This document shows positions 6,647-47,589 of a DNA stretch of 64,000 nucleotides, one piece after another (positions within the stretch are counted from its first letter, which is position 1; every line of letters begins with the position of its first letter). Both the position numbers and the translations under genes were made by a program. A model generated the notes under the pieces. That model had not been told where the DNA came from. It worked only from the letters and a program-made list of their open reading frames with translations, and did no database searches. The stretch is from positions 1 to 64,000 of the IMG/VR virus record IMGVR_UViG_3300035181_000357. One strand, written 5' to 3'.

Positions 6647-7628
6647 ACAACGCCTCTTCTATCAAGCTAAAGATAGTCCTACTAGTATGGAGTCTGAATC
6701 CTGCAGCACGATCATGGCCTCCACCACCTTTGAATGTACTAGCTATATATCCTGCACTAATTTTATCATTAGAACGTAAGCTAACAGATAAACCTATCTC
6801 GGTCTTACCATCTAATGTAATGTTCCTAAGTTCCCAACCTACGATCAAGTCCATGCCATCTAGACGCAACATCTCGGCCAGATCACTGATACTCGAGTCT
6901 CCATTATAGAAGGCCACATTGAAACCATTTATAGTTTTTAGTATACAGTTCTTTTTACGATTTAATGTTCTTAACTGATCTGTCTTGAACATGATAGAAG
7001 CCAGCTGTCTGTCATGTGGGGTTGGAATCCCATAGTATGAATTACCAAGCAGATTTAGATATAGAGATTGAGATCTAGACTCCTCGAATCTGGGATCATC
7101 AGATAGGAAACAATCAGCAATCCCTGCTAGCTCAGCTGCAGAAGTATCATCGCTAGAAATCCACGAAAACTGTAGTGCGACTTCATAAGCAAGAACAGCC
7201 CCAGACTCACCCTTACTATTAAGTCCGAACAGAATCTGGTTGGGATATTTTTCAATATAAGGAGCCAGATCAGCCAATCTACTGACATGGTGATCCAAAA
7301 TCTTCGCACCAGCTTTTAAGAAATCCTCTAACTGATCTGCTGGAGGACATGTATCCACAAACAGAGAATTCTCTGTAACGGATATTTTCTTATATGCTGT
7401 AACAGGATATAAGAAATCTGCATTATCCATGTTCTCGAACGGGACATACTTAAGTAGAAGATTTCTACCCATGATACCATCAGGACAGTAACTGTGAAAA
7501 TATAGTCTCTTAGTCTTCTCAATATTCTCTGAGAAATCCGACAACATGTCATCATTAATTATCTCTAACTGGTCTAATCTTAACATATCATCCTCAGATA
7601 ATAAGTACGGGACCGAAATCCCGTACAC
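6615..7628 (-). CDS. DHH/DHHA1 phosphoesterase (NrnA-like)
   Basis: HSYCPDG, FVD, ILDHH, and C-terminal SLRS...GGGGHDRAAGF. Confidence 0.85.
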   Translation of the reverse strand: MYGISVPYLLSEDDMLRLDQLEIINDDMLSDFSENIEKTKRLYFHSYCPDGIMGRNLLLKYVPFENMDNADFLYPVTAYKKISVTENSLFVDTCPPADQLEDFLKAGAKILDHHVSRLADLAPYIEKYPNQILFGLNSKGESGAVLAYEVALQFSWISSDDTSAAELAGIADCFLSDDPRFEESRSQSLYLNLLGNSYYGIPTPHDRQLASIMFKTDQLRTLNRKKNCILKTINGFNVAFYNGDSSISDLAEMLRLDGMDLIVGWELRNITLDGKTEIGLSVSLRSNDKISAGYIASTFKGGGGHDRAAGFRLHTSRTIFSLIEEALYGEGIICWVV

Positions 7629-7641
7629 ATAATCCTTCTAT

Positions 7642-7806
7642 TTATTTAGATATCGTACATTCCTTACATTCACAATATTCACATTTGACACAGTAGAAAT
7701 AGTCACCCTCTTTATCATGAACTAAAGGAGCATCTATAGTAACTTCCTGACCTTTGTATCTGGCATGAATTTCACAACCGTTAGGGCAAACTCGATCACT
7801 GTCCAC
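7642..7806 (-). CDS. Small Cys-rich protein (54 aa, GTG start)
   Basis: Manual translation MDSDRVCPNGCEIH...YCVKCEYCECKEC fills the intergenic gap; it is below the ORF-track length cutoff. Confidence 0.45.
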   Translation of the reverse strand: MDSDRVCPNGCEIHARYKGQEVTIDAPLVHDKEGDYFYCVKCEYCECKECTISK

Positions 7807-8551
7807 TTAAGATCTCGTTAATGAAGTCTTTAGCTTCCTGCCAAGTCAACACAGCACTAGCAGCAGCGACTTCATCATAATCCATATCTAATTTGCTGGC
7901 AATGTATCGGATAGCAGCTTCAGGACCGTTCTTGACTTCGATGAAGAACTTACTGAGATTCCCTTCTGCGAAGGATACGAATTGGTTACTCTTATTAGAA
8001 TCTTCGATTCTTTCAAGCATCTCTAGATTGGATTGTTTGTCATCTTCATTCCAGGAATTACCAGCTTCATCAAGCACACGTACAATTCTGGAATTAGGGG
8101 ATGAAGTCTTAGTGTTACCTGCTGTCAGGAATTCTGAGACAGCCTCAGACTCAGTGGCCAAACTAACTCGACCGAGTGAGCCAAACTTGATACGACCTAG
8201 GGAACGTAAGTGGAGATCAAGAGTAACTACTTCTGTCCCGACTTGCAATGCACATTCCTCATTGTCTAGAAGCAGACCACCAGATAGAAGGTAGTAGAGC
8301 TGGTCTGAGCTAACCTGAATACTAACAGCCACAGACTTAACATCTGGAGAAGCAATCTCTTCGTCGTCCTCGGCATAGTCTTTAAGGTGCTCAGCATAGA
8401 TATCAGCGACTTCTTTGTTGTGCTTAGAGTCTAAGATTCCAACGATATAGTAAGTTGGGAGCTCATCACTATCTTTCAGATGCTGGAAAAGATTCCAGCT
8501 AATCTCTAGTGCCTCAGCTTGTTTCTCGGTAATTGGTGTAAATTGATACAT
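7796..8551 (-). CDS. Hypothetical acidic protein
   Basis: 251-aa ORF in the operon with an upstream GAGG RBS; no recognised motif. Confidence 0.6.
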   Translation of the reverse strand: MYQFTPITEKQAEALEISWNLFQHLKDSDELPTYYIVGILDSKHNKEVADIYAEHLKDYAEDDEEIASPDVKSVAVSIQVSSDQLYYLLSGGLLLDNEECALQVGTEVVTLDLHLRSLGRIKFGSLGRVSLATESEAVSEFLTAGNTKTSSPNSRIVRVLDEAGNSWNEDDKQSNLEMLERIEDSNKSNQFVSFAEGNLSKFFIEVKNGPEAAIRYIASKLDMDYDEVAAASAVLTWQEAKDFINEILSGQ

Positions 8552-8589: not shown

Positions 8590-8913
8590 TCAGATATGAT
8601 GGATTACCCCTTGCGAATCTGGTTTAGACCACATTCGCTTTTTATTTATCTCCATTTTACGGAGTACTTCATACTCCATATCGAAGCCCATCTGACCAGC
8701 TAAGTTCAGTGCGACGATTACAATATCGGCTAATTCTTCCTTCGCCTTGTCCAAGTCTTGTACTTCCCACTCTACTTTAAGCTCATTTAGCTCTTTTTCG
8801 AGGTGAAGCATCTGCCCATCAGGTGTACGATCTGGGATCTTGGCATCTGCCCAGGTCTTTATACCATCTTGAATATTTTTCAATCTTCTCTTACTTTTGA
8901 ACAAAGAAATCAT
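8590..8913 (-). CDS. MazG-like / DUF550-type dNTP pyrophosphohydrolase
   Basis: HLEKELNEL...EELADIVIV (ExxE..ExxD) and KMEINKKRMW...G.IHH C-terminus. Confidence 0.75.
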   Translation of the reverse strand: MISLFKSKRRLKNIQDGIKTWADAKIPDRTPDGQMLHLEKELNELKVEWEVQDLDKAKEELADIVIVALNLAGQMGFDMEYEVLRKMEINKKRMWSKPDSQGVIHHI

Positions 8914-9091
8914 TCCTTATCTCCCCAAACATGTCTAGTAGGTTTCTAGCTAATAGGATCTCACCATCATTAACACCTTCGTCATAAGCAGACGAATTAT
9001 CTGTGTACTGCTCAGCCAAGAAATATGGATCATCACAGGCTGCAGTTTCAGCTGCTTTAGTCTTAAGGTAGTCTAGTAATCGTTCATTCAT
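8891..9091 (-). CDS. Hypothetical protein
   Basis: 66 aa, overlaps both neighbours in operon fashion. Confidence 0.55.
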   Translation of the reverse strand: MNERLLDYLKTKAAETAACDDPYFLAEQYTDNSSAYDEGVNDGEILLARNLLDMFGEIRNDFFVQK

Positions 9092-9932
9092 AATCTGATC
9101 CTAAGAGCCATCGAGTAAACTTGTAATCCTTAGGAACATCTTCGATAGGATTGATTCCATATGCTTGAAGGAATCCACATTCTGCAGCACAACTTATTCT
9201 CGGAACTACCAGATCTGCATACATAGACTCATCCCCGGTTCCTACGATATTTCTGACTAGATCAAAGTGACGCTCATACACATGAAAGCTATCTGCTGTA
9301 TGATAGTATGTACCCAACCCTAACTCAGGGTAAACTTCTTTGAGATAAACAAATACCATCTCGTGGATAAAACTGAAACATGGTGCGTCATTTCCCATAC
9401 CAAACACAGCATCCTGTGATCGCATGTGCACACTCATGTTGACTCTGTTGTCTCTAATCCTGAAATTGAGACTATAAGTACATGGAACATCCTTTGCTTC
9501 ATCAATAAAATGTTCTGGCTCAGAGCCTAGGATAATAATACTGGCTCTACGACTATCTCTGTCTTTTATCAATTCCCTGACGACTCGTGTCATACCACCT
9601 TTGGTGAAGACATAGTGTCCGTAGTTGGAGTTAATATATGGGAGACCTCTAGAGTCTAGAACCTTAACATCTCCCCATATCTTTGCATGATCACAGATAG
9701 ACATATCATATCTGTCACCACGAAGATACCATAGGAATTCTTTCTTAATGTAATTGATATTTAATTTTCTATCTTTGAAATTGGTGAATCGAACGTATGG
9801 TTCTAACTCATAACTAAAATGTTCACACTCTAAGACAGGAAGGCCTCGAGGAGTTGACATCTTCCCTTTATCGATAAGCCTGGTATACACTTTATAGAAC
9901 TCGTTCCAGCTAACATATGAATCTAATGTCAT
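9084..9932 (-). CDS. Thymidylate-synthase-family enzyme, probable dCMP hydroxymethylase/methylase
   Basis: EFLWYLRG, NSNYG, DSRRA, DVPCT (catalytic Cys), MRSQDAVFGMGND, HVYERHF. Asp sits at the ThyA Asn177 position, as in T4 gp42 (MRSNDVVFGFRND). Confidence 0.8.
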   Translation of the reverse strand: MTLDSYVSWNEFYKVYTRLIDKGKMSTPRGLPVLECEHFSYELEPYVRFTNFKDRKLNINYIKKEFLWYLRGDRYDMSICDHAKIWGDVKVLDSRGLPYINSNYGHYVFTKGGMTRVVRELIKDRDSRRASIIILGSEPEHFIDEAKDVPCTYSLNFRIRDNRVNMSVHMRSQDAVFGMGNDAPCFSFIHEMVFVYLKEVYPELGLGTYYHTADSFHVYERHFDLVRNIVGTGDESMYADLVVPRISCAAECGFLQAYGINPIEDVPKDYKFTRWLLGSDYE

Positions 9933-10165
9933 TCTCTAGTCCTCAACCTAGTCAAAAGCGCAACATCCTCTAACCTGATACCCTCTGTAACATGCGCGAT
10001 CACAGACTCTATAGTAGCACTAGGTACTTTATTTCTTTTATAATTCTCTCTAATAATACCTAATAAAGTTGGAATAATCTCGTCTCTGTTATTAGACACT
10101 AGAGTATTCCAACTTCCATCTGTTTTATCTATTAGAGCTGACTTAACTTGTTCAGAAGTTATCAC
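9929..10165 (-). CDS. Hypothetical protein
   Basis: 78 aa, ATGA-type overlap with the downstream gene. Confidence 0.55.
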   Translation of the reverse strand: MITSEQVKSALIDKTDGSWNTLVSNNRDEIIPTLLGIIRENYKRNKVPSATIESVIAHVTEGIRLEDVALLTRLRTRE

Positions 10166-10622
10166 ACTGCTCTCTAATCTTTAGTACGAAGGTATCCCAA
10201 TCAGTTACTACTTCTTGACCATAATACTTAGCAGTGACATCAATATTACCTTTCCTGAAATACTTATCTGTACAGTATATCAAGACAGGAGCATTAGAAC
10301 CTAGACCCAATCCTAATTCCAGTAACGTGATTGGAGACTGGCTCCCATCTGCAAAATAGTATACAATCAGATCTGCATCTTCTTGTCCCTTTAGTTCCCA
10401 CTCAACCTGCTGTCTGAACTGTGGATCGTCAATACTCTGCTTCCAGCTACTATCCCAGTCATCTCGTCTTGGGTTAAGTAATAGAACATTCTCATCACTC
10501 AATTCTGAAGATAGCTTAGTCTGCCAATCTTCAGCGGATCCCATGTCGATAGAACCAGCTAAGAAGATGGTGAATTGAGCATCATTGTTATATGTTCCTG
10601 GTGCTTTTACTATCTTGGCCAT
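10152..10622 (-). CDS. Nucleoside 2-deoxyribosyltransferase-like / nucleotide N-glycosidase
   Basis: IFLAGSID...WQ...LLNPRRDDWD...QVEWEL.....AD.I..YF...SQSPITLLELG. Confidence 0.8.
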   Translation of the reverse strand: MAKIVKAPGTYNNDAQFTIFLAGSIDMGSAEDWQTKLSSELSDENVLLLNPRRDDWDSSWKQSIDDPQFRQQVEWELKGQEDADLIVYYFADGSQSPITLLELGLGLGSNAPVLIYCTDKYFRKGNIDVTAKYYGQEVVTDWDTFVLKIREQCDNF

Positions 10623-11530
10623 TACAGTTCTCCTATATCGATACTCTTAGACATTGCTCTCTGAAAATCATCCATTATAGAATCAGGCATAGAGTCGTTC
10701 CCGATAATTGTTAAGGAATTTAACCTGGGATAAACATTTAATACCTCTGGATACGCATATGCGAAGACAGTTAATTTTCTAGCCAACAGCGAGCGGCCCA
10801 AAATATCCCCACCAGACTTTGAGAAGAACTTGGTATGGATCTTGGGAACCGCGATCCAGCCATCTGAGTTCTCCATCTGCATGGGGACAGTAAACTCGGT
10901 AGGCCACAGAAGTTGAAGAAGTTTGTGATGCGGTTGATGAAGTTTCATGTATTTCTCAACTTCAAACCGAAGCATAGACATATTCTGACTATCTGCGAGT
11001 GCAGGAGTCTGGTTCTTTGCAGATAGTCTCCAACTGATGTTGTTCGAGAACTTACCTGCAATACGTTCAATAGCTACTAGGTTAACAGCTTTGTTGTACG
11101 TCTCTGACCAAGGTGATTCACTCTTATCAATCTTCCCCTTAACCAATGGATCTGGAGATCCTAGTTTAACAGCATCAGCAGCCGTCTCCATGATGTCTCG
11201 TCGAAGACTATCTAGATCAAATTGGAACTGGGGAGCAGCCTGTAGATTTAGTATACACTGTGATGCAATGTTATAGTCTAGAAGATCTGTATTAGCCAAC
11301 TGTTTAGACAACAGGATCCCATCATATGTAACAGGTCTCTCTCGCTTAACTGATTCAAAGATATCAGAGAAGATAGTCCATACGAACTGTCTAGCATGGT
11401 CAGTCCGATCGAAAGCAATAGGAAGTTTACTCGACCAGTAATCAGCCATAGTTTCTTCAGTGGCCATAACAATTCCTACGACTTCACAGAATTGCTTTAA
11501 GATAACGTCATTAAGATTTTTAGAGCTCAC
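10622..11530 (-). CDS. Hypothetical protein
   Basis: 302-aa coupled ORF, no recognised motif. Confidence 0.6.
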   Translation of the reverse strand: MSSKNLNDVILKQFCEVVGIVMATEETMADYWSSKLPIAFDRTDHARQFVWTIFSDIFESVKRERPVTYDGILLSKQLANTDLLDYNIASQCILNLQAAPQFQFDLDSLRRDIMETAADAVKLGSPDPLVKGKIDKSESPWSETYNKAVNLVAIERIAGKFSNNISWRLSAKNQTPALADSQNMSMLRFEVEKYMKLHQPHHKLLQLLWPTEFTVPMQMENSDGWIAVPKIHTKFFSKSGGDILGRSLLARKLTVFAYAYPEVLNVYPRLNSLTIIGNDSMPDSIMDDFQRAMSKSIDIGEL

Positions 11531-12509
11531 AATAATCCTTTACCAGGTCTTTAACCGTTTTATCATCACAGATGGCATCTAGAATTTCTAGAGGATCATC
11601 TGACTCAACTTCTGATACTTGCTCTTCCATGTCATCTAGGAACATCTTCATCTCTTCAGATTTAGCTACTTTCTTCATAGATGAATCAGCTATCTGAAAA
11701 CATGCCTCTAATGGAACTGTTGGTACTATCTTCTCTACTACCTTAATCCCTTCTGCAGAAAAAGAGATTACTGGAACCACGATGTCACGATCGACTTCAT
11801 CGATTGACAAGCTGGCACGAGACAAGGATCCATAATGTAGGTGATGAGTCTTCCCGACTTTCTTTGGTTCAACTCGTGAATGGTCGTGTCCCCATAACAC
11901 TACATCAAACCCGTATGGTTCTAAAGTATTGTATCCAATAGTTCTTTCACCAAAGAAATCACCATCTTCACCAGGACGTCCTACCTGGTGGATCACAGCT
12001 ACACGGTAGCAATCATCATACTTGTCAATCTCTGGTTTAGAGGCTTTTAGTGCCTCTAACGTAGTCTCAGTGTCTCTGTAATCAAACCCAATTACCATAA
12101 CCCTGACACCCTCGTCCTGACACCTGAATACTGTAGGTTCAGTTATTGGGCGATAGACATGTGATGCAATCAGGACACCTAGGGGTGAGTTGTCTAGCGT
12201 TGATATGTTATGATTAAAATCGTGATTTCCAACAATCCCATAAATATTTCCCCCAGGAAAAGAAGAAAAAACCTCTATAGCCTGATTGATCATACTTGGA
12301 GGATTGGCTAGAGATTGCCACCTCTTAACATGAAACACATCCCCGCCACATATCGCAGCACCTTTAACTTTATGGGTGAGGGCACTGGCAAACCTTATCT
12401 TGCCCAGGATGGTCTGTTCATAATTATCTCGTCGTCTTCCAGGAGGAGTAGCGGATAGATGAATATCGGTAATGAAGGTTAGATTTATTTTATGATGATT
12501 TAGTATCAT
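11520..12509 (-). CDS. SbcD/Mre11/gp47-like metallophosphoesterase nuclease
   Basis: TDIH, GGDVF, GNHD, H, GHDH and YGSL calcineurin-like motifs. Confidence 0.85.
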   Translation of the reverse strand: MILNHHKINLTFITDIHLSATPPGRRRDNYEQTILGKIRFASALTHKVKGAAICGGDVFHVKRWQSLANPPSMINQAIEVFSSFPGGNIYGIVGNHDFNHNISTLDNSPLGVLIASHVYRPITEPTVFRCQDEGVRVMVIGFDYRDTETTLEALKASKPEIDKYDDCYRVAVIHQVGRPGEDGDFFGERTIGYNTLEPYGFDVVLWGHDHSRVEPKKVGKTHHLHYGSLSRASLSIDEVDRDIVVPVISFSAEGIKVVEKIVPTVPLEACFQIADSSMKKVAKSEEMKMFLDDMEEQVSEVESDDPLEILDAICDDKTVKDLVKDYCEL

Positions 12510-12525
12510 AACTTCCGGAACAAAA

Positions 12526-12605
12526 GAGAAGAGAAGAGAAGAGAAGAGAAGAGAAGAGAAGAGAAGAGAAGAGAAGAGAAGAGAAGAGAAGAGAAGAGAA
12601 GAGAA
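12526..12605. repeat. Perfect (GAGAA)16 pentanucleotide tandem repeat, intergenic
   Basis: 16 units counted directly, between the dCMP deaminase stop and the SbcD start. Confidence 0.95.
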
Positions 12606-12615
12606 GAAATCTTGA

Positions 12616-13206
12616 TTAATCGATAACTCTTATGAATTTCATACCAGAATTCCTAGATATCCAGGATAATGCTGGTCTATCATACTCGGGTTGAGGTCTA
12701 TCTGTTTTATATATGACTGTATTAACATTCCGAACTACACATTGTTTAGCACAATCTAAACAGGGGACAGCTGAGCAGAATAACACATACCCATCTTTGT
12801 CATTCAGATTAGATACCCTTGAAAATGCATCTATTTCTGCATGTATAGTCAGTCTACAGGTTCTTTCAGGTTGACATCCTATATCATTACATGAGAGTTC
12901 GTTGTCTTTTGAATATGGATAACGATTATATCCATATTCAGATTCTCTACTTTGGATAGAATAGATACATGACCCTATCTTAGCTCTACAGCATGGGGAG
13001 AAAGAACTTGTGATCTCTATATCCTTGAATATTTTAGATGTAAATTCATCTAGTTCAGCCAAGCCACCTAGCCCGAGAAGACCTGTTAAATAACTAGCCA
13101 TATCAAATTCTGGTTCCACTGGATACCAGATTATATTGTCACTATAGTCTAACTTTAGTTTAGACTCAGTTAAAGGATCACCGAATTCTTCTTGGACGAA
13201 TCGCAT
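12616..13206 (-). CDS. dCMP deaminase-like protein
   Basis: SPC....IG, GYN, HAE, PCLDC Zn-deaminase motifs, after a ~65-aa N-terminal extension. Confidence 0.8.
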   Translation of the reverse strand: MRFVQEEFGDPLTESKLKLDYSDNIIWYPVEPEFDMASYLTGLLGLGGLAELDEFTSKIFKDIEITSSFSPCCRAKIGSCIYSIQSRESEYGYNRYPYSKDNELSCNDIGCQPERTCRLTIHAEIDAFSRVSNLNDKDGYVLFCSAVPCLDCAKQCVVRNVNTVIYKTDRPQPEYDRPALSWISRNSGMKFIRVID

Positions 13207-13484: not shown

Positions 13485-14660
13485 TTAAACCTCTACTTTA
13501 AACATGTAACCACACTTAGGGCATTCTACTTTTGACGCTTGTTCTATCTGTTCTTGCTTACGGAGATCCTTTAAATCTCCTGATGTAGATTCTAAATCTG
13601 ATGATACTGTATCTAAGTCATTTTTGAGCAGCTTCAATAACCTGATATATCCGATGTAGTTGGGAAGTAACAGACACGCCGTATCTAGGTCTAGCAATTT
13701 CTTCTTATCTTTATTCAAGGAATCAGTGTCTAGAGCCTTAGTATCCAGGGTCACACTCTTTTTATTATATACATCTAAGAGGTATACAATAGAAGATAGT
13801 CTGGATTGTTTGTTTACAAGCTCCACTAGTTCCTTGAATGTTTCTAAACTTTTAGAAGATAAAGAATACGCGTACCTTGAATATCTATATGTGGATAGTA
13901 GACTAGATACCTTAGAGTTATTGGCTACAGGAGTCAAATCAAAATCTAGAACATCTATCTCAGATTTAGTCTCTACTAACTTATCTAGTTTATCAGATGT
14001 GATTAAAAATGTATCGACACAATCTACTGTGTCTAACAGTTCATTGTTCCTAGAATCCAATTTCTTTAAAGTTTTGGAAACAGGTTTAGCTTGTTCCAAG
14101 AACATACTTAGTTTATGTGCTTTAGCCTCTGCATCAGTTATCATCTTAGCCGTTACTTTAGCCTCTACATCTAGTTCTTTTATCTTCGTACCGATCCTTT
14201 TCTTACCTTGATCTAATTTCTCTGTTGAAGAAAATGCACCCAACACAGTGTTCAAATCAGCTGGTGAACTACAAAGAAGGAATTGATTATCAAACTGACC
14301 ACCAAAGATGGGATCAAGCTCGACATTCCCAATATGGATAGAAGAGTACCCCATCTTAGCAACAGCTTCTGGGATATTCCCTGCGAGCTTCCCATACTCT
14401 ACACCGTTCACGGTATAAGTAGTAGCAGCCTTCGTAGTTCTTTTAGCAACGACAGTGTTCTTATCAAAAGAGATAGAAACAGCTAATTCTGTCTCACCTA
14501 TCTTGATCTTGTTAGCACCGATATCATTCCTAAATGTTCCACGAATCATTCGAAATACAGAAGACTTACCAATATCTGAGGGACCCACTATAGCAGTGAA
14601 TCCCTCGATATCAAGAAATGCATCTGACCAAGATTGAAAGTTAGATGCTTGTACTCGCAT
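13485..14660 (-). CDS. SbcC/Rad50/gp46-like ATPase, N-terminal half only
   Basis: NFQS, Walker A GPSDIGKS, Q-loop GQFD, coiled coil, ends in CPKC zinc hook. No signature motif or Walker B. Confidence 0.85.
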   Translation of the reverse strand: MRVQASNFQSWSDAFLDIEGFTAIVGPSDIGKSSVFRMIRGTFRNDIGANKIKIGETELAVSISFDKNTVVAKRTTKAATTYTVNGVEYGKLAGNIPEAVAKMGYSSIHIGNVELDPIFGGQFDNQFLLCSSPADLNTVLGAFSSTEKLDQGKKRIGTKIKELDVEAKVTAKMITDAEAKAHKLSMFLEQAKPVSKTLKKLDSRNNELLDTVDCVDTFLITSDKLDKLVETKSEIDVLDFDLTPVANNSKVSSLLSTYRYSRYAYSLSSKSLETFKELVELVNKQSRLSSIVYLLDVYNKKSVTLDTKALDTDSLNKDKKKLLDLDTACLLLPNYIGYIRLLKLLKNDLDTVSSDLESTSGDLKDLRKQEQIEQASKVECPKCGYMFKVEV

Positions 14661-15913
14661 TAGAACTCGTCTTCATCGTCTAAAATATCAGCGGATCCAT
14701 CGAATTCAGCGATATCTACACCATCTTCTTTGTGACCAGCCACTAACATCTCACCCTCGGTCAATACCGTATCAAAGGCTCCAGAATTATCAGAACGAAT
14801 GACTTCAACGAGCTGAGCTTTCAATCTGGTTAAGACCTCGAGATTTTCATCATAGACTAGATCTCTTACAGCCTGTTCCTTGTTGTCGTAGGTAGCGATG
14901 ATGTCTTCGTCGATCCCGACGAGCCACTTCTGACCCTTGTTCCTAATAAGACCATAACTACGAGCAAGCTCACGAACAGACATCCAATCATCAAGGCCAC
15001 GACCAGTTCTAAGATAGATAGAGTATTCTCTGTAGCTACCCATCGTAACCTTGTTCTTAAGAACTCGAACCTTGACCTTGGTAGCTTTGACACTCTTTGA
15101 GCTATTACTGTCAGACTCTGCTTCCATCAAGAAAGGATCGTCCACAGCACCCTTTAAAGCCTTCTGAGCATTGACTTCGATCATCAAAGATGGGACGTAG
15201 CGAACACTGTTTCCACCAGGTAGAACATATGGTAGATTGGTGTAAGATGGGTACTTTTGAGCCATAGCAGCCTCTTGACTACCATCGATACGAGCACGAA
15301 TCTGATTAACCATCAAGAATGAACAATCATGCTGCATTGCATATGGTAAAAGAATATCGAAGAAACGAACCATCATACGAGCGTGTTCTCCGACGCTTGC
15401 CTTGAAAGCTTGACCACTGCGGATGTCCTTCTTGTCTCGCTTCTGCTTCATCTTTGGAATGGAGTCGAATACGAACAGCTTACATCCGGCTTCAATGTAC
15501 TCCACAGCCTTCTGAATACAGTCCTCAATATCCGAGATCTTGAATACAGCGAGACCTGGACCAGTATTAACACCGACATTCTTAAGGTATTCGAAGGTGA
15601 CAGTTCCTTCAAAGTCGAAGATTACTGCAGGTAATCCAGTTTCTTTCTGGTAATTCTTCACCAAGTGATAACAGATAGTTGATTTACCGCCATGTTCTTT
15701 ACCATGAATATGGATTACACGACCACCAAAGGGGATACCTTGTAATCTTAGAACTTCATCCCAGACAATCGAATTGGTTGGGACCTTATGTTCTTGGTAA
15801 TTCTCGTCGATTAGGAACGAATTCGCATCATCTTTATACGATGCAGATAAAGAGGCAAACCTTGTCATCACATCACCACTAAGATCTTCTGATTTTGTTT
15901 TCTTTCTTGCCAT
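14660..15913 (-). CDS. recA: RecA/UvsX recombinase
   Basis: GIPFGGRVIHIHGKEHGGKS, FDSIP, NQIR, GGNSVRY..S, KNKV. Confidence 0.9.
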   Translation of the reverse strand: MARKKTKSEDLSGDVMTRFASLSASYKDDANSFLIDENYQEHKVPTNSIVWDEVLRLQGIPFGGRVIHIHGKEHGGKSTICYHLVKNYQKETGLPAVIFDFEGTVTFEYLKNVGVNTGPGLAVFKISDIEDCIQKAVEYIEAGCKLFVFDSIPKMKQKRDKKDIRSGQAFKASVGEHARMMVRFFDILLPYAMQHDCSFLMVNQIRARIDGSQEAAMAQKYPSYTNLPYVLPGGNSVRYVPSLMIEVNAQKALKGAVDDPFLMEAESDSNSSKSVKATKVKVRVLKNKVTMGSYREYSIYLRTGRGLDDWMSVRELARSYGLIRNKGQKWLVGIDEDIIATYDNKEQAVRDLVYDENLEVLTRLKAQLVEVIRSDNSGAFDTVLTEGEMLVAGHKEDGVDIAEFDGSADILDDEDEF

Positions 15914-43921: not shown

Positions 43922-44260
43922 TTACTTGACTTCTTTTTCCAGATCAGCTTCTAAAGTAGCTAATTCCCTGATACTCTTCTCGTAATCTGCATCAAGCTTT
44001 GACATCTGCTGTCTGGCTCGAAGGTCCAGATCTAACATTTGTTTGAATAGAGGATCTAGTTCCTGAGGATGTGGTCTCTTAGAAAGAGCTTGAAGCATAG
44101 AAGTTCTATCAGCGATACTCCTCTTAAGATGGACTAGGCCAGATCGTAATGGTATTAAAGCACTTACAATCTGCTGAACTTCCTGGTATCTGGCTACCTT
44201 CTTTTTGAGTTCTCTAGTCTTCTTTTCAGCTTCTCTCTTTAACGCAGCTTCTGTTTTCAT
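43922..44260 (-). CDS. Coiled-coil hypothetical protein
   Basis: 112 aa, heptad-rich. Confidence 0.55.
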   Translation of the reverse strand: MKTEAALKREAEKKTRELKKKVARYQEVQQIVSALIPLRSGLVHLKRSIADRTSMLQALSKRPHPQELDPLFKQMLDLDLRARQQMSKLDADYEKSIRELATLEADLEKEVK

Positions 44261-47200
44261 TTCTTCCTTTTCTTAAACTCATCAGGAATATCTTTCTTAA
44301 AAACCTTATCGATAGCACTTCTCTTACCTTTGTAACCGAACACTACCTTTGAGTTTCCGATCCCCAGATACTTAATAAGTTCTTCGAAATCCTCTGGTCT
44401 TAGATCATCTCGAAGAAATGGAAACCCATCCTCATGATATTCATATTCAACAGGTTCTTCATCTTCTCTTCTTGGGATATGTGCTGGCTCTGCTACTTCT
44501 ATCTCCTCTTCCACCTCATCTGTCTCTACTACGAGTTTCATAACAGGTTTGATGATCGTAACATTAGGATTGCTAAGAGTTCCTAGGCGACCACCTGCTG
44601 GTAACTCTGGTCTATTCTTTGGATCTAATCCCATTCTCTCTTCATATTCAGCTATGGTTTCTAATTTTGAGTCATCTAGTTCCTGGTCTATACCCCAGAA
44701 CTCATCTAGTTGATAACATACGATCAATTTAATCCTGAGGGTTTTAACATCCTTATCCAGGTAGGATTTTAGCACCTGCTGGGCAGATTGGGTACGAGGA
44801 TGTAGGTTCTTCTCTAGATAAGATAAAGCCTTATCCCTCTTGTCCGGATCTTGTAGAGCCTCAAAAATCTTATTAAAGGATTTAGTCCCACCTGGTATAT
44901 ATTCTTCCAGGCCAGAAATTGCTGTCCAGGCCATTGGTTCATGTCCATCATCACCCGTCAGATGTTCTGTGACGTCCCAAGAACGACCATATTCTGTATC
45001 ACACTCAATAGGAACGATCCATTTCATCTTCTCGTGAAGATCACGAAGTCTCATCAACCTAGTCAACCTAGGAATGACGAATGGGACATATTCATTCTTT
45101 ACAGAATAGTCGATTTCATCGTGAACGCTACCGTGTAGCTCATAGACATTCTCTATACCTGGATCAGACTGGGACCAGTGTCGAATCCGATTCAAAGCCA
45201 TACGCATGAAATCACCAGCCAGACCCTGAAGAGGGATATTGATACTAACTCTCTGGATCTTACCGATAAACTTCTTGTAATCCTGCATATTTCTTACACC
45301 AGTAGATTTATCATAATACATGGTGTCTGCAGCTTTACGCAATCTGGCAATAGCACCTGGTGGAACATCTTCACCAGCCTTTTCTTGAGATTCTAGTTCT
45401 TTCAGAGAATTCTTTATCTCCCACCAACGGCGATAGTTCCTAGCATGCTCAGCATTTGGGTAATAAATCTTCTGAGCAGCCATTGCGGATTCAAATTTAA
45501 TGATTCTACCCGTTGCTGTCTTGCAGATCATACTCTCTTTAGCAATCTTCTGCTTATGATATACCCATTCTGCAAACTGTGGGACACCTTCCCAATACTT
45601 ATCAACCATGACTTTACACTCGTCGAAAGTAATTTCTTTGATTACCTTCTTCATCGACTCAAAGATGGTGTAGGCCGTACCACCATACAAAAGAGCGAAG
45701 TTCAAGATCTTGGCGAGCGATCTTAAGAATTTCTTTCTATCCTTTGGTGTCTTAGGATCAGAGAATTCAGGGAATACAGCTCTTGCTGTTAACGAGTGGA
45801 AGTCACCCTCACCTTCAAGGAATTCCTTAACGAAATTATCTTCTTTAGAGATATTAGCAGCCACACGCATTTCAATGTTGGAATAGTCTGTCGTAAAGAA
45901 TGTCCATCCAATCTTAGCAATGAACAAACTTCTAATATTCAGAATTTCTTCTGAATCGACCTTTTCAGACGTCGTATCTGGACCCTGAATGAACTCACAT
46001 GATGTACAAGATGGTACTAGACAGAACAAATCACCAAAGTATTCACCATAATGATTCCCTTTGATCCCTTTAGCTAGTTTCAAGGTCCCATCATCTTCTT
46101 TATTATAACAGGAAGGATGGAGGTCTTTTATATCATATTGGGCTTCTGGAACTGAGTTGATTCGTCGTCCCTGAACCCACTTATTACCTTCCACTCTCTT
46201 AATGGCTTGGATGTTAAGACCGAACCCTCCATCTTTCTCAAACTCACCACCAGTAGCTGACAAACGACCACCAGCTACTACGCACTGTCGAAGGTAGATT
46301 CGTGCCGTATGATCAACAGGATCATATGATAGATTTCCAGGATGAAGAGCAGCATATTCACGATATTCCATCAATTTCTTCAAGAACAGGTCATCTGGAT
46401 GAATCTTTAGCAATTCTTCTAAAGTCTCTGCATCGGTGGATGGTACCTTTGTCTTTTCACTCACTCTGAAAGGTTTAAATCCTTTATGCTTGAACAGAAT
46501 CTTGACTAACTGGATAGGAGAAGATGGATTAAAGACATCCCCGTCTTCACCTTCAATCTTCTTCCATTCTGCAATCTCTTCTAGCTCTTTCTTCAGAACT
46601 TCTAGTTTCCCGCCATGCCACTTGATTGTCTTCTTAAGCTTCTTCACATCAACATGGAAACGCTGACGCTCAATCCAGGTGATTGTGTCAATCAACTCAT
46701 GATCAATCTTATGTGCTAATTTTAATTCTCTGGAACTGTCTCGAAGCTCATCCCATAGGAGCCAAGTGCAGATAGCGTCACCTGCTGCATACCAGAGAGC
46801 GATGTCAGTGGGTACCCAGTTAAATGGAGCATGCTGTGATCGTAACGTAGTTTTTCCAGTTTCTGAGTTATAATAATCTGCCTTGACACTAGTCAAGGTC
46901 TTTAACTCAATCTGATCCATATCCAATCTTGTCTTGGACTGGAACTTCAAACCATCTGCAGCATGTCCTTTATCTCCCATATCTGCCTTGGGATCATCTA
47001 AGTATGCATCTACTTGAACATCTTCAATATATGGGTATTCTCTAATCAGAATGTTCATTAGAAGTTTAAGGACTTCTTTGTCGTATTTAGCATTGTAGAA
47101 GATCAAGAGACACTTATCGAAGAGTTCCTGTAGGATCTGCCTACATTCCTCTCTGTCTATATTGTTCCCATCCTCGTGAGTAATTGGAACATAGATACCT

Positions 47201-47589
47201 TCATACCCATTAGAGCTTAAACAGATACCTGCAATCTCATTCCTAATCTTATAGGAACCATCTGGTTGCATAATGATTCTGTTATCCAGACCAGTGGTCT
47301 CAGTATCCACTGCGATCGCTGGCATTCTTTCACCAGTACGAGCTACCTCATACTTCTCTCCAGACATAACTGATTCTGCCCAGACATGGAGTTCCTTGGC
47401 ACTAGTTATTAGTCTGAACGCCTTCTTATTCATCCATGGGAATTTGATTGAATCGATTCCGGCCTTCTGAATAGCGTCTACGTGTCTGTTGAACACAGAC
47501 CTTAGATCGTTGGGCAATTTTTCTTTCTTGGCTTTCTTGACCAACTTCATATCGTCAATAGATATGTCCTCGGTGACTACTCTAGACAT
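44257..47589 (-). CDS. polA: DNA polymerase family A with 3'-5' exonuclease
   Basis: Exo DTETTG, YNAKYD and YAAGD; motif A DYSNIEMR; motif B KILNFALLYG; motif C HGSVHDEI. Confidence 0.93.
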   Translation of the reverse strand: MSRVVTEDISIDDMKLVKKAKKEKLPNDLRSVFNRHVDAIQKAGIDSIKFPWMNKKAFRLITSAKELHVWAESVMSGEKYEVARTGERMPAIAVDTETTGLDNRIIMQPDGSYKIRNEIAGICLSSNGYEGIYVPITHEDGNNIDREECRQILQELFDKCLLIFYNAKYDKEVLKLLMNILIREYPYIEDVQVDAYLDDPKADMGDKGHAADGLKFQSKTRLDMDQIELKTLTSVKADYYNSETGKTTLRSQHAPFNWVPTDIALWYAAGDAICTWLLWDELRDSSRELKLAHKIDHELIDTITWIERQRFHVDVKKLKKTIKWHGGKLEVLKKELEEIAEWKKIEGEDGDVFNPSSPIQLVKILFKHKGFKPFRVSEKTKVPSTDAETLEELLKIHPDDLFLKKLMEYREYAALHPGNLSYDPVDHTARIYLRQCVVAGGRLSATGGEFEKDGGFGLNIQAIKRVEGNKWVQGRRINSVPEAQYDIKDLHPSCYNKEDDGTLKLAKGIKGNHYGEYFGDLFCLVPSCTSCEFIQGPDTTSEKVDSEEILNIRSLFIAKIGWTFFTTDYSNIEMRVAANISKEDNFVKEFLEGEGDFHSLTARAVFPEFSDPKTPKDRKKFLRSLAKILNFALLYGGTAYTIFESMKKVIKEITFDECKVMVDKYWEGVPQFAEWVYHKQKIAKESMICKTATGRIIKFESAMAAQKIYYPNAEHARNYRRWWEIKNSLKELESQEKAGEDVPPGAIARLRKAADTMYYDKSTGVRNMQDYKKFIGKIQRVSINIPLQGLAGDFMRMALNRIRHWSQSDPGIENVYELHGSVHDEIDYSVKNEYVPFVIPRLTRLMRLRDLHEKMKWIVPIECDTEYGRSWDVTEHLTGDDGHEPMAWTAISGLEEYIPGGTKSFNKIFEALQDPDKRDKALSYLEKNLHPRTQSAQQVLKSYLDKDVKTLRIKLIVCYQLDEFWGIDQELDDSKLETIAEYEERMGLDPKNRPELPAGGRLGTLSNPNVTIIKPVMKLVVETDEVEEEIEVAEPAHIPRREDEEPVEYEYHEDGFPFLRDDLRPEDFEELIKYLGIGNSKVVFGYKGKRSAIDKVFKKDIPDEFKKRKK

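What the first reader, a model, noticed from the sequence alone, without database searches (positions are those of the whole stretch)
8590..13206. Predicted cytosine-modification pathway: dCMP-type TS homologue + dNTP pyrophosphohydrolase + NDT-like glycosidase + dCMP deaminase
Seen: the TS-family gene has RSQDAVFGMGND, with Asp where ThyA has Asn177. It is flanked by a MazG/DUF550-like gene and an NDT-like gene. Known: that Asn-to-Asp switch confers dCMP specificity in T4 gp42; T4 pairs gp42 with a dCTPase; a TS-family CMP hydroxymethylase (MilA) plus an NDT-family glycosidase (MilB) act together in mildiomycin synthesis. Inference: the genome carries 5hmC or 5mC, copied here by a family-A rather than T4-type family-B polymerase, with the NDT-like enzyme editing nucleotide pools. 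No glycosyltransferase is visible in the window, so any further modification is unknown.
Basis: partly seen in the sequence, partly recalled or inferred. Interest (0 to 1): 0.75.

Follow-up and report, generated by a model that had tools for sequence, protein, structure and literature searches.

The report
Predicted 5-hydroxymethylcytosine pathway in jumbo phage
An uncultured large phage from sediment carries the well-known gene set (a thymidylate-synthase relative specific for dCMP, a nucleotide pyrophosphatase and a dCMP deaminase) that should replace cytosine in its DNA by 5-hydroxymethylcytosine; this is a new example of a known trick, and the neighbouring NDT-like gene is probably not part of it.

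Summary
The 282-aa gene at 9084-9932(-) is a thymidylate-synthase homologue with Asp182 where E. coli ThyA has Asn177. It lies between a MazG-like gene and a PF15891 NDT-like gene, with a dCMP deaminase 2.7 kb away.

The product can be narrowed. At every published diagnostic position the enzyme matches T4 gp42, the dCMP hydroxymethylase. It does not match the 5mC synthase, the 5-hydroxy-dCMP synthase or ThyA. All 120 closest homologues share this signature.

In 57 loci with this TS family, the usual neighbours are a deaminase (31 loci), an NTP pyrophosphatase, a dNMP-kinase-like gene and often a glycosyltransferase. One of these is a true T4 beta-glucosyltransferase homologue. So 5hmC is the best prediction.

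The MilA/MilB-style pairing with the NDT-like gene is not supported. That gene occurs in only 5 of the 57 loci. Among the 80 best viral NDT loci, one has a TS (canonical), while 17 have NAMPT, usually next door.

No kinase, glycosyltransferase, ThyA/ThyX or DHFR was found in the 210-kb record, which is about 69% complete. This gene-set architecture is already known from the MetaGPA work, so this is a new member of a known kind. Nothing has been tested experimentally.

The parts
9084..9932 (-). Thymidylate-synthase homologue (282 aa), predicted dCMP C5-hydroxymethylase (5hmdCMP synthase)
   Evidence: PF00303. The best solved relatives are T4 gp42 (2.4e-16) and MilA (7e-16), far ahead of ThyA. 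The residues at E. coli positions 143/146/147/169/177 are D148, C151, T152, D174 and D182, the same as in T4 gp42. S102-N103-Y104 matches T4 S94-x-Y96. The family HMM scores T4 gp42 at 111 bits, against 55 for RB69 gp48, 55 for ThyA and 41 for PaMx74.
8590..8913 (-). MazG-like all-alpha NTP pyrophosphohydrolase (107 aa), the positional equivalent of the dCTPase; specificity unknown
   Evidence: PF12643, PF04447 and PF03819, each just over its cut-off. Best solved relative is MazZ 7ody (1.1e-9); DCTPP1 scores 0.006. It matches the HMM of the PRA-PH pyrophosphatases that sit 12 bp from the TS in 13 other loci (1.1e-5). ELNE41 and EELAD59 are present.
8891..9091 (-). 66-aa ORF between the TS and MazG-like genes; no homologue found, may or may not be a gene
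   Evidence: No Pfam or PHROG hit. It is a singleton in the 57-locus clustering.
9929..10165 (-). 78-aa ORF, conserved upstream of the TS in the closest relative
   Evidence: It shares a cluster with an ORF of L007. No family hit.
10152..10622 (-). NDT-superfamily protein (PF15891, 156 aa) with the catalytic-type Glu102 in LLELG; probably not a dedicated part of the cytosine pathway
   Evidence: PF15891 7e-33. The AF2 model (pLDDT 93.5) has TM 0.80 to 4mcj (uncharacterised) and 0.58-0.64 to NDTs, DNPH1 and MilB alike. There are at least 7985 homologues, including bacterial ones.
10622..11530 (-). 302-aa conserved protein of unknown function with a family-A-polymerase-like fold; not a kinase or a glycosyltransferase
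   Evidence: No family hit. 66 homologues were found. The AF2 model has pLDDT 94. The top 17 VIA-align hits are all family-A DNA polymerases or T7-like RNA polymerases, Z 9.5-5.9. ESM-atlas gives TM 0.55 to a PF00476 cluster.
11520..12509 (-). SbcD/Mre11-like phosphoesterase (recombination gene interleaved in the module)
   Evidence: PF00149 1.1e-8 and phrog_100 SbcD-like.
12524..12607 (.). Perfect (AAGAG)x16.8 microsatellite in the only sizeable intergenic gap of the module
   Evidence: TRF score 168, 100% matches. Sequence read. Absent from relative L008. Contigs of all four runs break here.
12616..13206 (-). dCMP-deaminase-family zinc deaminase (196 aa, with a roughly 65-aa N-terminal extension)
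   Evidence: PF00383 3e-8 and phrog_174. HAE122 and PCLDC148 are present. Best solved relatives are phage, bacterial, human and T4 dCMP deaminases. It belongs to the deaminase cluster found in 31 of 57 TS loci.
7796..8551 (-). 251-aa protein of unknown function, a conserved neighbour of the TS/pyrophosphatase genes in the jumbo-phage relatives
   Evidence: Clusters with ORFs of L007, L037, L043 and L050. Only about 110 N-terminal residues are conserved. No family hit.
44257..47589 (-). Family-A DNA polymerase (1110-aa ORF), the enzyme that would incorporate the modified dCTP
   Evidence: PF00476 in three stretches, best 3.5e-26.

Best explanation
The region encodes the nucleotide-pool half of a pre-replicative cytosine-replacement pathway of the T4 type. 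It lies in an uncultured jumbo phage related to Ralstonia phage RsoM2USA.

1. The MazG-like pyrophosphatase is proposed to hydrolyse dCTP to dCMP. This step is inferred from gene position only.
2. The TS homologue adds the methylene of 5,10-methylene-tetrahydrofolate to C5 of dCMP and hydrates it, giving 5-hydroxymethyl-dCMP. This step is inferred from a complete match to the experimentally defined hydroxymethylase signature.
3. An unidentified kinase raises 5hmdCMP to the triphosphate. The family-A polymerase then builds it into phage DNA in place of C.
4. The deaminase diverts part of the dCMP pool to dUMP for thymidylate synthesis by a host ThyA or an unseen phage ThyA, as T4 Cd does. It may also accept 5-substituted dCMP.

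Whether the 5hmC is decorated further is unknown. Relatives carry glycosyltransferases next to the TS gene, but this record shows none.

The SbcCD-like and UvsX-like genes, and the 302-aa protein with a polymerase-like fold, are replication or recombination genes that merely share the operon. The NDT-like gene is most likely a general salvage gene that travels independently.
For: **Signature.** At E. coli positions 143/146/147/169/177 the enzyme reads D-C-T-D-D, identical to T4 gp42. RB69 5hoC synthase reads E-C-T-N-D, PaMx74 5mC synthase N-C-P-D-D and ThyA L-C-H-D-N.
- INSNYG is identical to T4, supplying Ser94 and Tyr96. Val stands at the Trp83 position, as in T4.
- The meaning of these residues comes from experiments. 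N177D sets dCMP specificity. In T4, D145N, S94N and Y96F abolish 5hmdCMP formation. D169N marks 5hoC synthases (PMC6400193; PMC13326640; PMC8670742).
- All 120 closest homologues keep D177, D169, D/E143 and S-N-Y.

**Similarity.** T4 gp42 and MilA are the best solved relatives. The family HMM gives T4 gp42 111 bits, against 55 or fewer for the other classes.

**Context in 57 loci with this family**
- Deaminase in 31 loci, median 58 bp away.
- All-alpha NTP pyrophosphatases directly beside the TS: PRA-PH in 13 loci, dUTPase_2 in 10, MazG/DUF550 in 3. A trimeric dUTPase-family gene (PF00692) occurs in 5 loci, directly after the TS in 3 of them.
- dNMP-kinase-like genes: AAA_28 type in 19 loci, Tmk-like in 13.
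- GT2+TPR glycosyltransferases in 9 loci, median 198 bp away.
- In L009 the TS gene (55% identical to ours) overlaps a true homologue of T4 beta-glucosyltransferase (24% identity over 298 aa, 6e-19). A hydroxyl acceptor is what such enzymes need.

**Other points.** No DHFR was found in the record, which fits a reaction that does not oxidise folate; PaMx74 has frd in its 5mC module. The architecture of TS(D177) + deaminase + pyrophosphatase + PolA is statistically tied to cytosine-modified contigs. The tight, overlapping gene spacing suggests co-transcription.
Against: - No biochemical or DNA-composition data exist for this phage or for any member of its TS clade.
- In the tree the clade (44 rows, support 99/99) is separate from the T4 gp42 clade, so the function is carried over by residues, not by orthology.
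- No dNMP kinase able to phosphorylate 5hmdCMP was recognised in the 210-kb record. The only small P-loop kinase sits beside an RNA ligase and looks like a Pnk.
- The best solved relative of the MazG-like protein is MazZ, a purine-specific enzyme, and PF04447 members hydrolyse dATP/dGTP.
- No ThyA or ThyX was found, so the fate of dUMP depends on the host or on the missing ~31% of the genome.
- The L143 rule for methyl versus hydroxymethyl is correlative. The PaMx74 5mC enzyme has Asn there, not a hydrophobic residue.
Confidence: 0.62

Rival explanations
1. The TS homologue is a dCMP methyltransferase of the XP12/PaMx74 type. The DNA would carry 5mC, and the linked deaminase would convert 5-methyl-dCMP to dTMP. 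This would explain the absence of a ThyA.
For: - Asp at position 177 alone is also compatible with 5mdCMP synthesis.
- In MetaGPA contigs, five of seven TS genes linked in cis to a deaminase made 5mdCMP, and many linked deaminases prefer 5mC.
- No ThyA or ThyX was found in the record.
- PaMx74 has the same pyrophosphatase-TS-deaminase order.
Against: - The enzyme differs from the PaMx74 enzyme at positions 143 (D vs N) and 147 (T vs P), and in the S-x-Y motif (PaMx74 has AAY). It scores only 20 bits against PaMx74, compared with 63 against T4 gp42.
- T4 D145N loses hydroxymethylation, so the Asp is functionally tied to hydration.
- No DHFR was found, although a methylating TS consumes reduced folate.
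- Glycosyltransferases next to the TS in clade members need a hydroxyl group.
Confidence: 0.1
2. The TS homologue makes 5hmdCMP, but the linked deaminase converts much of it to 5hmdUMP. The phage DNA would then carry 5-hydroxymethyluracil (or a derivative) at T positions, with or without 5hmC. The NDT-like enzyme, like human DNPH1, would control the 5hmdUMP pool.
For: - Seven TS-linked phage deaminases produced 5hmdU when supplied with 5hmdC nucleotides.
- No ThyA or ThyX is in the record.
- DNPH1, an NDT-family enzyme, hydrolyses 5hmdUMP (PMC10483697 and PMC10603095, listed). The NDT-like protein has the same fold and the nucleophile-type Glu.
Against: - Known 5hmU phages use Asn177 dUMP hydroxymethylases, not this route.
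- The NDT-like gene is absent from 52 of 57 loci with this TS family.
- The genome has a second deaminase elsewhere, and the substrate preference of either is unknown.
Confidence: 0.08
3. The enzyme is a flavin- and O2-dependent 5-hydroxy-dCMP synthase, as in RB69 and DLP3, giving 5hoC for later glycosylation.
For: It shares N177D and an acidic residue at position 143 with those enzymes. Relatives have adjacent glycosyltransferases.
Against: The diagnostic D169N change is absent here and in all 120 homologues. The family HMM scores RB69 gp48 at 55 bits, against 111 for T4 gp42.
Confidence: 0.03
4. The NDT-like enzyme is a dedicated member of the cytosine pathway, in the manner of MilB. It would hydrolyse or transglycosylate a cytosine nucleotide, either to remove dCMP or to recycle 5hmC base.
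For: - It lies two genes from the TS in the same overlapping gene string.
- The arrangement is kept in L007 and L037, and the gene occurs within 10 kb of the TS in L050 as well. It also appears in an unrelated architecture in L053.
- L009 has a different NDT-clan protein (DUF7768/DUF4406) right after TS-deaminase.
- A phage NDT-family enzyme working in a modified-base pathway now has a precedent, DmtZ.
Against: - It occurs in only 5 of 57 TS loci.
- Of the 80 best viral PF15891 loci, 1 has a TS (signature LCHDN, canonical) and 4 a deaminase. 17 have NAMPT (median 79 bp away, same strand in 16 of 16) and 12 have NMNAT-Nudix.
- The family is also common in bacterial chromosomes.
- In L053 the gene sits next to the NAMPT/NMNAT pair.
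- Its structure is no closer to MilB than to NDTs or DNPH1.
Confidence: 0.15

Closest known systems
T4 gp42 dCMP hydroxymethylase, with gp56 dCTPase, Cd dCMP deaminase and gp1 dNMP kinase
   Same: - TS fold with the same catalytic and specificity residues: Cys, Glu58-equivalent, Ser-x-Tyr, Asp three residues before the Cys, Asp at position 177, Asp169 retained.
- An all-alpha NTP pyrophosphatase and a dCMP deaminase are encoded by the same phage.
- Beta-glucosyltransferase homologues lie next to the gene in a clade member.
   Different: - About 29% identity to gp42, and a separate, well-supported clade.
- The genes are clustered in one operon rather than scattered as in T4.
- The replicative polymerase is family A, not family B.
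- No gp1-like kinase, td, frd or glucosyltransferase is recognisable in the held record.
TS(D177) + deaminase + PRA-PH/MazG + PolA modules of cytosine-modified metavirome contigs (MetaGPA: eLife 2021 PMC8670742; bioRxiv 10.1101/2024.12.05.627091)
   Same: The same domain set and the same tight linkage. One clade member (L009) comes from an assembly labelled YANG21-1, apparently that project's sample.
   Different: - Most of the TS genes tested in that work made 5mdCMP, whereas this clade carries the hydroxymethylase signature.
- This example sits in a jumbo phage of more than 210 kb.
- Here the module is interleaved with SbcCD/UvsX recombination genes.
Ralstonia jumbo phage RsoM2USA ORF10, annotated 'putative thymidylate synthase'
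   Same: It is the closest cultured relative (53% identity) and has the same signature. A deaminase lies next to it, and NAMPT and NMNAT are nearby.
   Different: RsoM2USA also encodes a canonical Td and a DHFR elsewhere. Its DNA modification has not been examined.
MilA/MilB (CMP hydroxymethylase + hmCMP N-glycosidase of mildiomycin biosynthesis)
   Same: A D177-type TS homologue and an NDT-superfamily protein are encoded close together.
   Different: - The NDT-like protein belongs to a different family (PF15891) and is structurally equidistant from MilB, DNPH1 and NDTs.
- The pairing is not conserved.
- The context here is DNA replication, not antibiotic synthesis.
DmtZ of Z-genome phages (NDT-family dAMP hydrolase / deoxyribose-5-phosphate transferase; PMC12884076)
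   Same: It is a phage NDT-superfamily enzyme located among nucleotide-pool genes of a base-replacement pathway.
   Different: No sequence-level relationship was shown here. DmtZ is linked to PurZ and DutZ. The PF15891 genes are linked mainly to NAMPT and NMNAT.

Membership tests
dCMP hydroxymethylase (T4 gp42 type, 5hmdCMP synthase) | Thymidylate-synthase fold with the catalytic Cys (E. coli C146 / T4 C148) | tested here: met
   PF00303 1.8e-14. C151 aligns with C146 and is invariant in the family.
dCMP hydroxymethylase (T4 gp42 type, 5hmdCMP synthase) | Asp at the position of E. coli Asn177 (T4 Asp179), which gives cytosine specificity | tested here: met
   D182 here; Asp in 120 of 120 homologues.
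dCMP hydroxymethylase (T4 gp42 type, 5hmdCMP synthase) | [quoted passage not shown] | tested here: met
   D148-V-P-C151 here. Among the 120 homologues, 114 have D and 5 have E (one gapped). The rule comes from PMC6400193 and PMC13326640.
dCMP hydroxymethylase (T4 gp42 type, 5hmdCMP synthase) | Ser or Thr two residues before the catalytic-base Tyr (T4 Ser94-x-Tyr96) | tested here: met
   INSNYG is identical to T4. S-N-Y occurs in 120 of 120 homologues.
dCMP hydroxymethylase (T4 gp42 type, 5hmdCMP synthase) | Orthology: placement inside the clade of characterised T-even enzymes | tested here: not met
   The window's enzyme lies in a separate 44-member clade (support 99/99). T4 gp42 groups elsewhere on long branches. 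It is therefore filed as 'works like', a distinct clade with the same signature.
dCMP hydroxymethylase (T4 gp42 type, 5hmdCMP synthase) | Formation of 5hmdCMP from dCMP and methylene-THF | not testable with these tools
   Needs an enzyme assay, or an in vivo assay with LC-MS.
5-hydroxy-dCMP synthase (RB69 gp48 / DLP3 gp80) | Asn replacing E. coli Asp169 | tested here: not met
   D174 is retained here, and Asp169 is kept in 120 of 120 homologues.
dCMP methyltransferase (XP12 / PaMx74 type) | Active-site pattern of a 5mC-genome phage enzyme (PaMx74: N143, P147, A-A-Y), with a DHFR in the module | tested here: not met
   The window's enzyme has D148, T152 and S-N-Y. It scores 20 bits against the PaMx74 enzyme. 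No DHFR is in the record, whereas PaMx74 has frd beside cd-thyA. Only one reference sequence was available.
Canonical thymidylate synthase ThyA | Asn177, Leu143 and His147, and a score above the NCBIfam equivalog cut-offs | tested here: not met
   The residues are D, D and T at those positions. The best NCBIfam score is 47.6 bits against a cut-off of 327.
All-alpha NTP pyrophosphohydrolase acting as dCTPase (T4 gp56 role) | MazG-type fold with the acidic metal-binding motifs | tested here: met
   PF12643, PF03819 and PF04447 are at or just above their cut-offs. ELNE41 and EELAD59 are present. MazZ 7ody scores 1.1e-9.
All-alpha NTP pyrophosphohydrolase acting as dCTPase (T4 gp56 role) | Specificity for dCTP | not testable with these tools
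   The only support is positional: a pyrophosphatase lies beside the TS in at least 26 of 57 loci. The nearest solved relative, MazZ, is (d)GTP-specific. T4 gp56 scores E = 0.14.
dCMP deaminase family | Zinc-binding H-A-E and P-C-x-x-C motifs within a PF00383 domain | tested here: met
   HAE122 and PCLDC148. PF00383 3e-8. The best solved hits are dCMP deaminases. Substrate preference (dCMP versus 5-substituted dCMP) is not testable here.
MilA/MilB-type functional pair (TS homologue + NDT-family N-glycosidase) | Conserved co-occurrence of the two genes | tested here: not met
   The NDT-like gene is in 5 of 57 TS loci. Of 80 NDT loci, 1 has a TS, and it is a canonical ThyA type.
Nucleoside 2-deoxyribosyltransferase superfamily | NDT fold with the nucleophile Glu at the C-terminal end of a central strand-helix motif | tested here: met
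   PF15891 7e-33. The model has TM 0.80 to 4mcj and 0.58-0.64 to NDT, DNPH1 and MilB. E102 in LLELG is invariant. Assigning it as the nucleophile is by analogy only.

The most novel reading that the evidence does not exclude
The PF15891 NDT-like protein may be an uncharacterised N-glycosidic-bond enzyme of phage NAD+ salvage, not a cytosine-pathway enzyme.

- In viral contigs its commonest neighbour is NAMPT. NAMPT lies within 10 kb in 12 of 59 lineages and is the immediately adjacent gene in 8. It is on the same strand in 16 of 16 loci where both genes are present.
- A 'phosphatase' often lies directly upstream, and NMNAT-Nudix is often nearby.
- The protein could supply ribose-5-phosphate or nicotinamide. 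Alternatively it could exchange bases on a nucleoside monophosphate, much as DmtZ transfers deoxyribose-5-phosphate. Either role would make it a third component of the NAMPT/NMNAT route that phages use against NAD-depleting defences.
- In this phage the gene has moved into the 5hmC operon, where a DNPH1-like clean-up of 5hmdUMP is also conceivable.
Probability: 0.25. Interest if true: 0.6.

Novelty: new member of a known kind. Interest (0 to 1): 0.4.

Why it matters
If the prediction holds, the RsoM2USA-like jumbo phages and a large, widespread metagenomic clade of TS homologues (2054 homologues at E <= 1e-5) would join the viruses that fully replace C by 5hmC. They would do so with a family-A replicase and a hydroxymethylase clade distinct from the T-even one.

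That has three consequences:
- It affects how these genomes are sequenced, cloned and restricted.
- It bears on which host defences they evade or trigger.
- It offers a source of new hydroxymethylases, deaminases and polymerases that tolerate modified bases.

The analysis also gives a practical residue rule set for annotating such genes. At present they are labelled 'thymidylate synthase' or 'hypothetical protein'. Finally, it separates the NDT-like gene from the pathway and points it toward NAD salvage, which can be tested.

Tried and rejected
- **Near-identical phage record:** megablast of 6 kb against 50,697 phage records found nothing.
- **Missing pathway genes in the 210-kb record:**
  - No ThyX.
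  - No second TS.
  - No T4 beta-GT family match.
  - The GT1 search gave one 11-bit hit at 67004-67183 that Pfam does not support.
  - No GT2.
  - No DHFR.
  - phmmer or HMM searches with the following queries were all negative: T4 gp1, T4 gp56, the RB69 kinase and arabinosylation genes, the L009 neighbours, and HMMs of the kinase and GT clusters.
- **The AAA_33 P-loop kinase at 180119-180742** was considered as the dNMP kinase. It was rejected because it lies beside an RNA ligase, as Pnk genes do.
- **The CTP_transf_like gene at 6137-6646** was considered as a sugar-nucleotide enzyme for hypermodification. It was rejected because it passes the CoaD equivalog cut-off.
- **The 302-aa and 251-aa unknown proteins** were examined as candidate kinase or GT. 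The first has a PolA-like fold. The second has only a short conserved N-terminal part and no hits.
- **A tree to transfer function by orthology** was inconclusive because the reference branches are long.
- **Promoter and terminator scans** found no more sites than shuffled sequence.
- **Public runs** hold only assembled contigs, so nothing could be learned about base modification from reads.
- **Literature searches** for PF15891 or 4mcj, and for an NDT-NAMPT link, found nothing.

Full report
**What is there**

The window is the first 64 kb of a 210,611-bp IMG/VR virus record, estimated to be about 69% complete. The same sequence occurs in assemblies of four sediment and microbial-mat runs. Their contigs reproduce the gene order of the region with zero to a few differences.

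Nearly all genes from 2.2 to 64 kb lie on the minus strand. Reading down the coordinates from 16735 to 6137, the genes overlap or abut: the gaps are -32 to +38 bp, with one 106-bp exception. The string is as follows:
- an unannotated 269-aa gene;
- a UvsX/RecA-like recombinase (14660-15913);
- an SbcC/Rad50-like ATPase (13485-14660);
- a 92-aa ORF;
- a dCMP-deaminase-family gene (12616-13206);
- the 106-bp gap;
- an SbcD/Mre11-like phosphoesterase (11520-12509);
- a 302-aa unknown protein (10622-11530);
- a PF15891 NDT-like gene (10152-10622);
- a 78-aa ORF;
- the TS homologue (9084-9932);
- a 66-aa ORF;
- a MazG-like gene (8590-8913);
- a 251-aa unknown protein;
- a 54-aa ORF;
- a DHH/DHHA1 phosphoesterase;
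- a CoaD-like adenylyltransferase.

The peptide RSQDAVFGMGND is at residues 171-182 of the TS homologue. Asp182 aligns with E. coli Asn177.

**Which reaction the TS homologue catalyses**

Recent experimental papers give residue rules, in E. coli numbering:
- C146 is the nucleophile.
- N177D switches the substrate from dUMP to dCMP.
- An acidic residue at 143 (T4 Asp145), together with Ser94-x-Tyr96, positions the water that makes the product hydroxymethyl rather than methyl. The T4 mutants D145N, S94N and Y96F are all inactive.
- D169N marks the newly discovered flavin/O2-dependent 5-hydroxy-dCMP synthases of RB69, DLP3 and others.
- H147 differs between modified and unmodified contigs.

These rules come from PMC6400193, PMC13326640 and PMC8670742.

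I fetched T4 gp42, RB69 gp48, E. coli ThyA and the TS of PaMx74, a phage whose DNA is fully 5mC according to the 2024 preprint. I aligned them with the window's protein and its 120 closest database homologues.

| Enzyme | Positions 143/146/147/169/177 | Motif before the catalytic-base Tyr |
|---|---|---|
| Window's enzyme | D-C-T-D-D | INSNYG |
| T4 gp42 | D-C-T-D-D | INSNYG |
| RB69 gp48 | E-C-T-N-D | not compared |
| PaMx74 TS | N-C-P-D-D | AAY |
| E. coli ThyA | L-C-H-D-N | PVY |

All 120 homologues keep D177, D169, D/E143 and S-N-Y.

- By sequence score, the closest solved structures are T4 gp42 (2.4e-16) and the CMP hydroxymethylase MilA (7e-16). ThyA structures start at 1e-8.
- A family HMM gives T4 gp42 111 bits, against 55 for RB69 gp48, 55 for ThyA and 41 for PaMx74.
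- The protein falls far below every NCBIfam ThyA cut-off.
- A maximum-likelihood tree puts it in a well-supported clade of 44 sequences that includes RsoM2USA ORF10. This clade is distinct from the T4 gp42 clade, and the deep branches are long and unreliable.

So this enzyme should be described as a separate clade carrying the complete hydroxymethylase signature, not as a gp42 orthologue.

**Evidence from relatives**

I collected 55 IMG/VR loci encoding this TS family, plus two long metagenomic contigs and the window, and clustered all neighbouring ORFs. Representatives were annotated with Pfam. Recurrent neighbours within 10 kb, out of 57 loci:

| Neighbour | Loci | Distance from the TS |
|---|---|---|
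| Deaminase of the same family as 12616-13206 | 31 | median 58 bp |
| PRA-PH pyrophosphatase | 13 | 12 bp |
| dUTPase_2 pyrophosphatase | 10 | 20 bp |
| MazG/DUF550 type, as in the window | 3 | adjacent |
| Trimeric dUTPase-family gene (PF00692) | 5 | adjacent in 3 |
| P-loop dNMP-kinase-like, AAA_28 type | 19 | within 10 kb |
| P-loop dNMP-kinase-like, thymidylate-kinase-like | 13 | within 10 kb |
| GT2+TPR glycosyltransferase | 9 | median 198 bp |

- The window's MazG-like protein matches the HMM of the TS-adjacent PRA-PH group (1.1e-5).
- In the 405-kb contig L009 the TS gene is 55% identical to ours. It overlaps the end of a gene whose product is a genuine homologue of T4 beta-glucosyltransferase (24% identity over 298 residues, 6e-19), and a deaminase follows it. 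Enzymes of that kind need the hydroxyl of 5hmC.
- The closest cultured relative is ORF10 of the 344-kb Ralstonia phage RsoM2USA (53% identity). It is annotated only as 'putative thymidylate synthase'. That phage also has a true Td and a DHFR, and its DNA has not been analysed.
- The overall architecture is TS with Asp177, a linked deaminase, a PRA-PH/MazG pyrophosphatase and a family-A polymerase. It is already established as a statistical hallmark of cytosine-modified phage contigs.
- The window's family-A polymerase is at 44257-47589.

**What is missing**

Within the held 210 kb I found none of the following:
- ThyX, or a second TS;
- DHFR;
- any beta-GT, GT1 or GT2 family member;
- a relative of the kinases or glycosyltransferases seen in the other loci.

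The absence of DHFR fits hydroxymethylation, which returns tetrahydrofolate. The absence of a kinase is a real gap in the pathway: host CMP/dCMP kinases are not expected to accept 5hmdCMP, which is established for T4. About a third of the genome is unseen, so these absences are weak evidence.

**The deaminase**

It has the zinc motifs HAE122 and PCLDC148. Its best solved relatives are dCMP deaminases from a cyanophage, Streptococcus, human and T4. A second, smaller deaminase lies at 161013-161408, and that one is the gene resembling RsoM2USA ORF8.

The 2024 preprint shows that TS-linked phage deaminases often prefer 5-substituted cytosines, and that this preference arose many times. The substrate of this one therefore cannot be read from its sequence.

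**The NDT-like gene**

It is a clear member of PF15891. Its model superposes on the uncharacterised Parabacteroides protein 4mcj (TM 0.80). It superposes equally, and less well, on nucleoside deoxyribosyltransferases, DNPH1 and MilB (TM about 0.6). The family is very large and strongly conserved, with the motifs FLAGSIxMG, NPRRDDWD, QVEWE, SPITLLELG and RKGN. It occurs in bacterial chromosomes as well as in many jumbo phages.

Its linkage to the TS is weak from both sides:
- It is present in 5 of the 57 TS loci. Four of these are the window and its close jumbo-phage relatives.
- Among the 80 best of at least 566 viral PF15891 loci, only one has any TS within 10 kb, and that TS has the canonical LCHDN signature. 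Four have a deaminase.

By contrast, 17 of those 80 loci carry NAMPT (median 79 bp away) and 12 carry NMNAT-Nudix. After dereplication, that is 12 of 59 lineages, with NAMPT the immediate neighbour in 8 and on the same strand in 16 of 16 loci. A 'phosphatase' (phrog_335) lies directly upstream in 13 loci.

The window's own genome has NAMPT and NMNAT-Nudix at 168.5-171.3 kb. In RsoM2USA, NAMPT lies 2.3 kb from the TS homologue. The MilA/MilB analogy is therefore not supported. A role connected with nicotinamide-nucleotide or general nucleotide salvage is more likely, but it is unproven. DmtZ of Z-genome phages shows that NDT-family enzymes can serve base-replacement pathways, so a local role, for example removing 5hmdUMP as DNPH1 does, is not excluded.

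**Other genes in the interval**

The 302-aa protein has 66 homologues and no family assignment. Its model is confident (pLDDT 94). Foldseek finds nothing significant, but a search that does not depend on Foldseek returns only family-A DNA polymerases and T7-like RNA polymerases in its top 17 hits (Z 9.5-5.9). The ESM atlas gives TM 0.55 to a PF00476 cluster. It is not a kinase or a transferase, and its function is unknown.

The single intergenic gap holds a perfect (AAGAG)x16.8 microsatellite that is absent from the relative I checked (L008).

**Verdict**

- The NDT part does not stand.
- The dCTPase assignment is positional only.
- This is a new, uncharacterised member of a known kind of system. 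Its interest is moderate, and rests mainly on extending 5hmC-type replacement to a jumbo-phage lineage and to a large separate clade of hydroxymethylase-like enzymes.

Noticed in passing
window 12524-12607: A perfect pentanucleotide microsatellite, (AAGAG)x16.8, which reads (TTCTC)n on the coding strand. It fills the only sizeable intergenic gap of the operon, just upstream of the SbcD-like gene. It is absent from relative L008, and the assemblies of all four runs break there.
   Followed up: partly
window 10622-11530 (-): A conserved 302-aa protein with no family assignment. Its confident AF2 model resembles the fingers/palm of family-A DNA polymerases and T7-like RNA polymerases (VIA-align Z up to 9.5; atlas TM 0.55). 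It may be a degenerate or accessory polymerase-like protein.
   Followed up: partly
IMG/VR loci L082-L161; own genome 168495-171261: PF15891 NDT-like genes in viral contigs are most often next to NAMPT, and near NMNAT-Nudix, on the same strand. A phrog_335 'phosphatase' often lies directly upstream. This suggests an undescribed accessory of phage NAD+ salvage. The window's genome has NAMPT and NMNAT-Nudix about 160 kb away from its NDT-like gene.
   Followed up: partly
window 6137-6646 (-) and 6615-7628 (-): A phage gene that passes the NCBIfam equivalog cut-off for CoaD, pantetheine-phosphate adenylyltransferase (140.7 vs 103.3 bits). It overlaps a DHH/DHHA1 phosphoesterase gene. This is an unusual pair for a phage.
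   Followed up: no
window 27122-28228 (-): A Volactin/actin-like protein (PF25216 2.3e-45, with a weaker FtsA match): a phage-encoded actin homologue.
   Followed up: no
G000:C1 161013-161408 (+): A second, small (131-aa) cytidine/dCMP-deaminase-family gene. It is this one, not the deaminase in the module, that resembles the deaminase next to the TS homologue in RsoM2USA.
   Followed up: partly
G000:C1 180119-182225 (+): An AAA_33 P-loop kinase, a 131-aa ORF and a PHA02142-type RNA ligase in a row, which looks like an RNA-repair cassette.
   Followed up: no
proteins P0033, P0043, P0089, P0101: Several members of the TS-homologue family are 435-470 aa long and carry a NUMOD3 motif. This suggests homing-endonuclease fusions or insertions in this gene.
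   Followed up: no
window 59925-59993: A perfect 15-bp tandem repeat, x4.6 (CTTCTTAGCAATACG), inside the 875-aa ORF at 59715-62342.
   Followed up: no
L009 8706-8969 and 11245-11583: In the 405-kb relative, the beta-GT-TS-deaminase block is flanked by a DUF6378 protein and a DUF7768/DUF4406 protein. From memory, DUF4406 belongs to the NDT clan. If so, a different NDT-clan protein sits in the same kind of module.
   Followed up: partly
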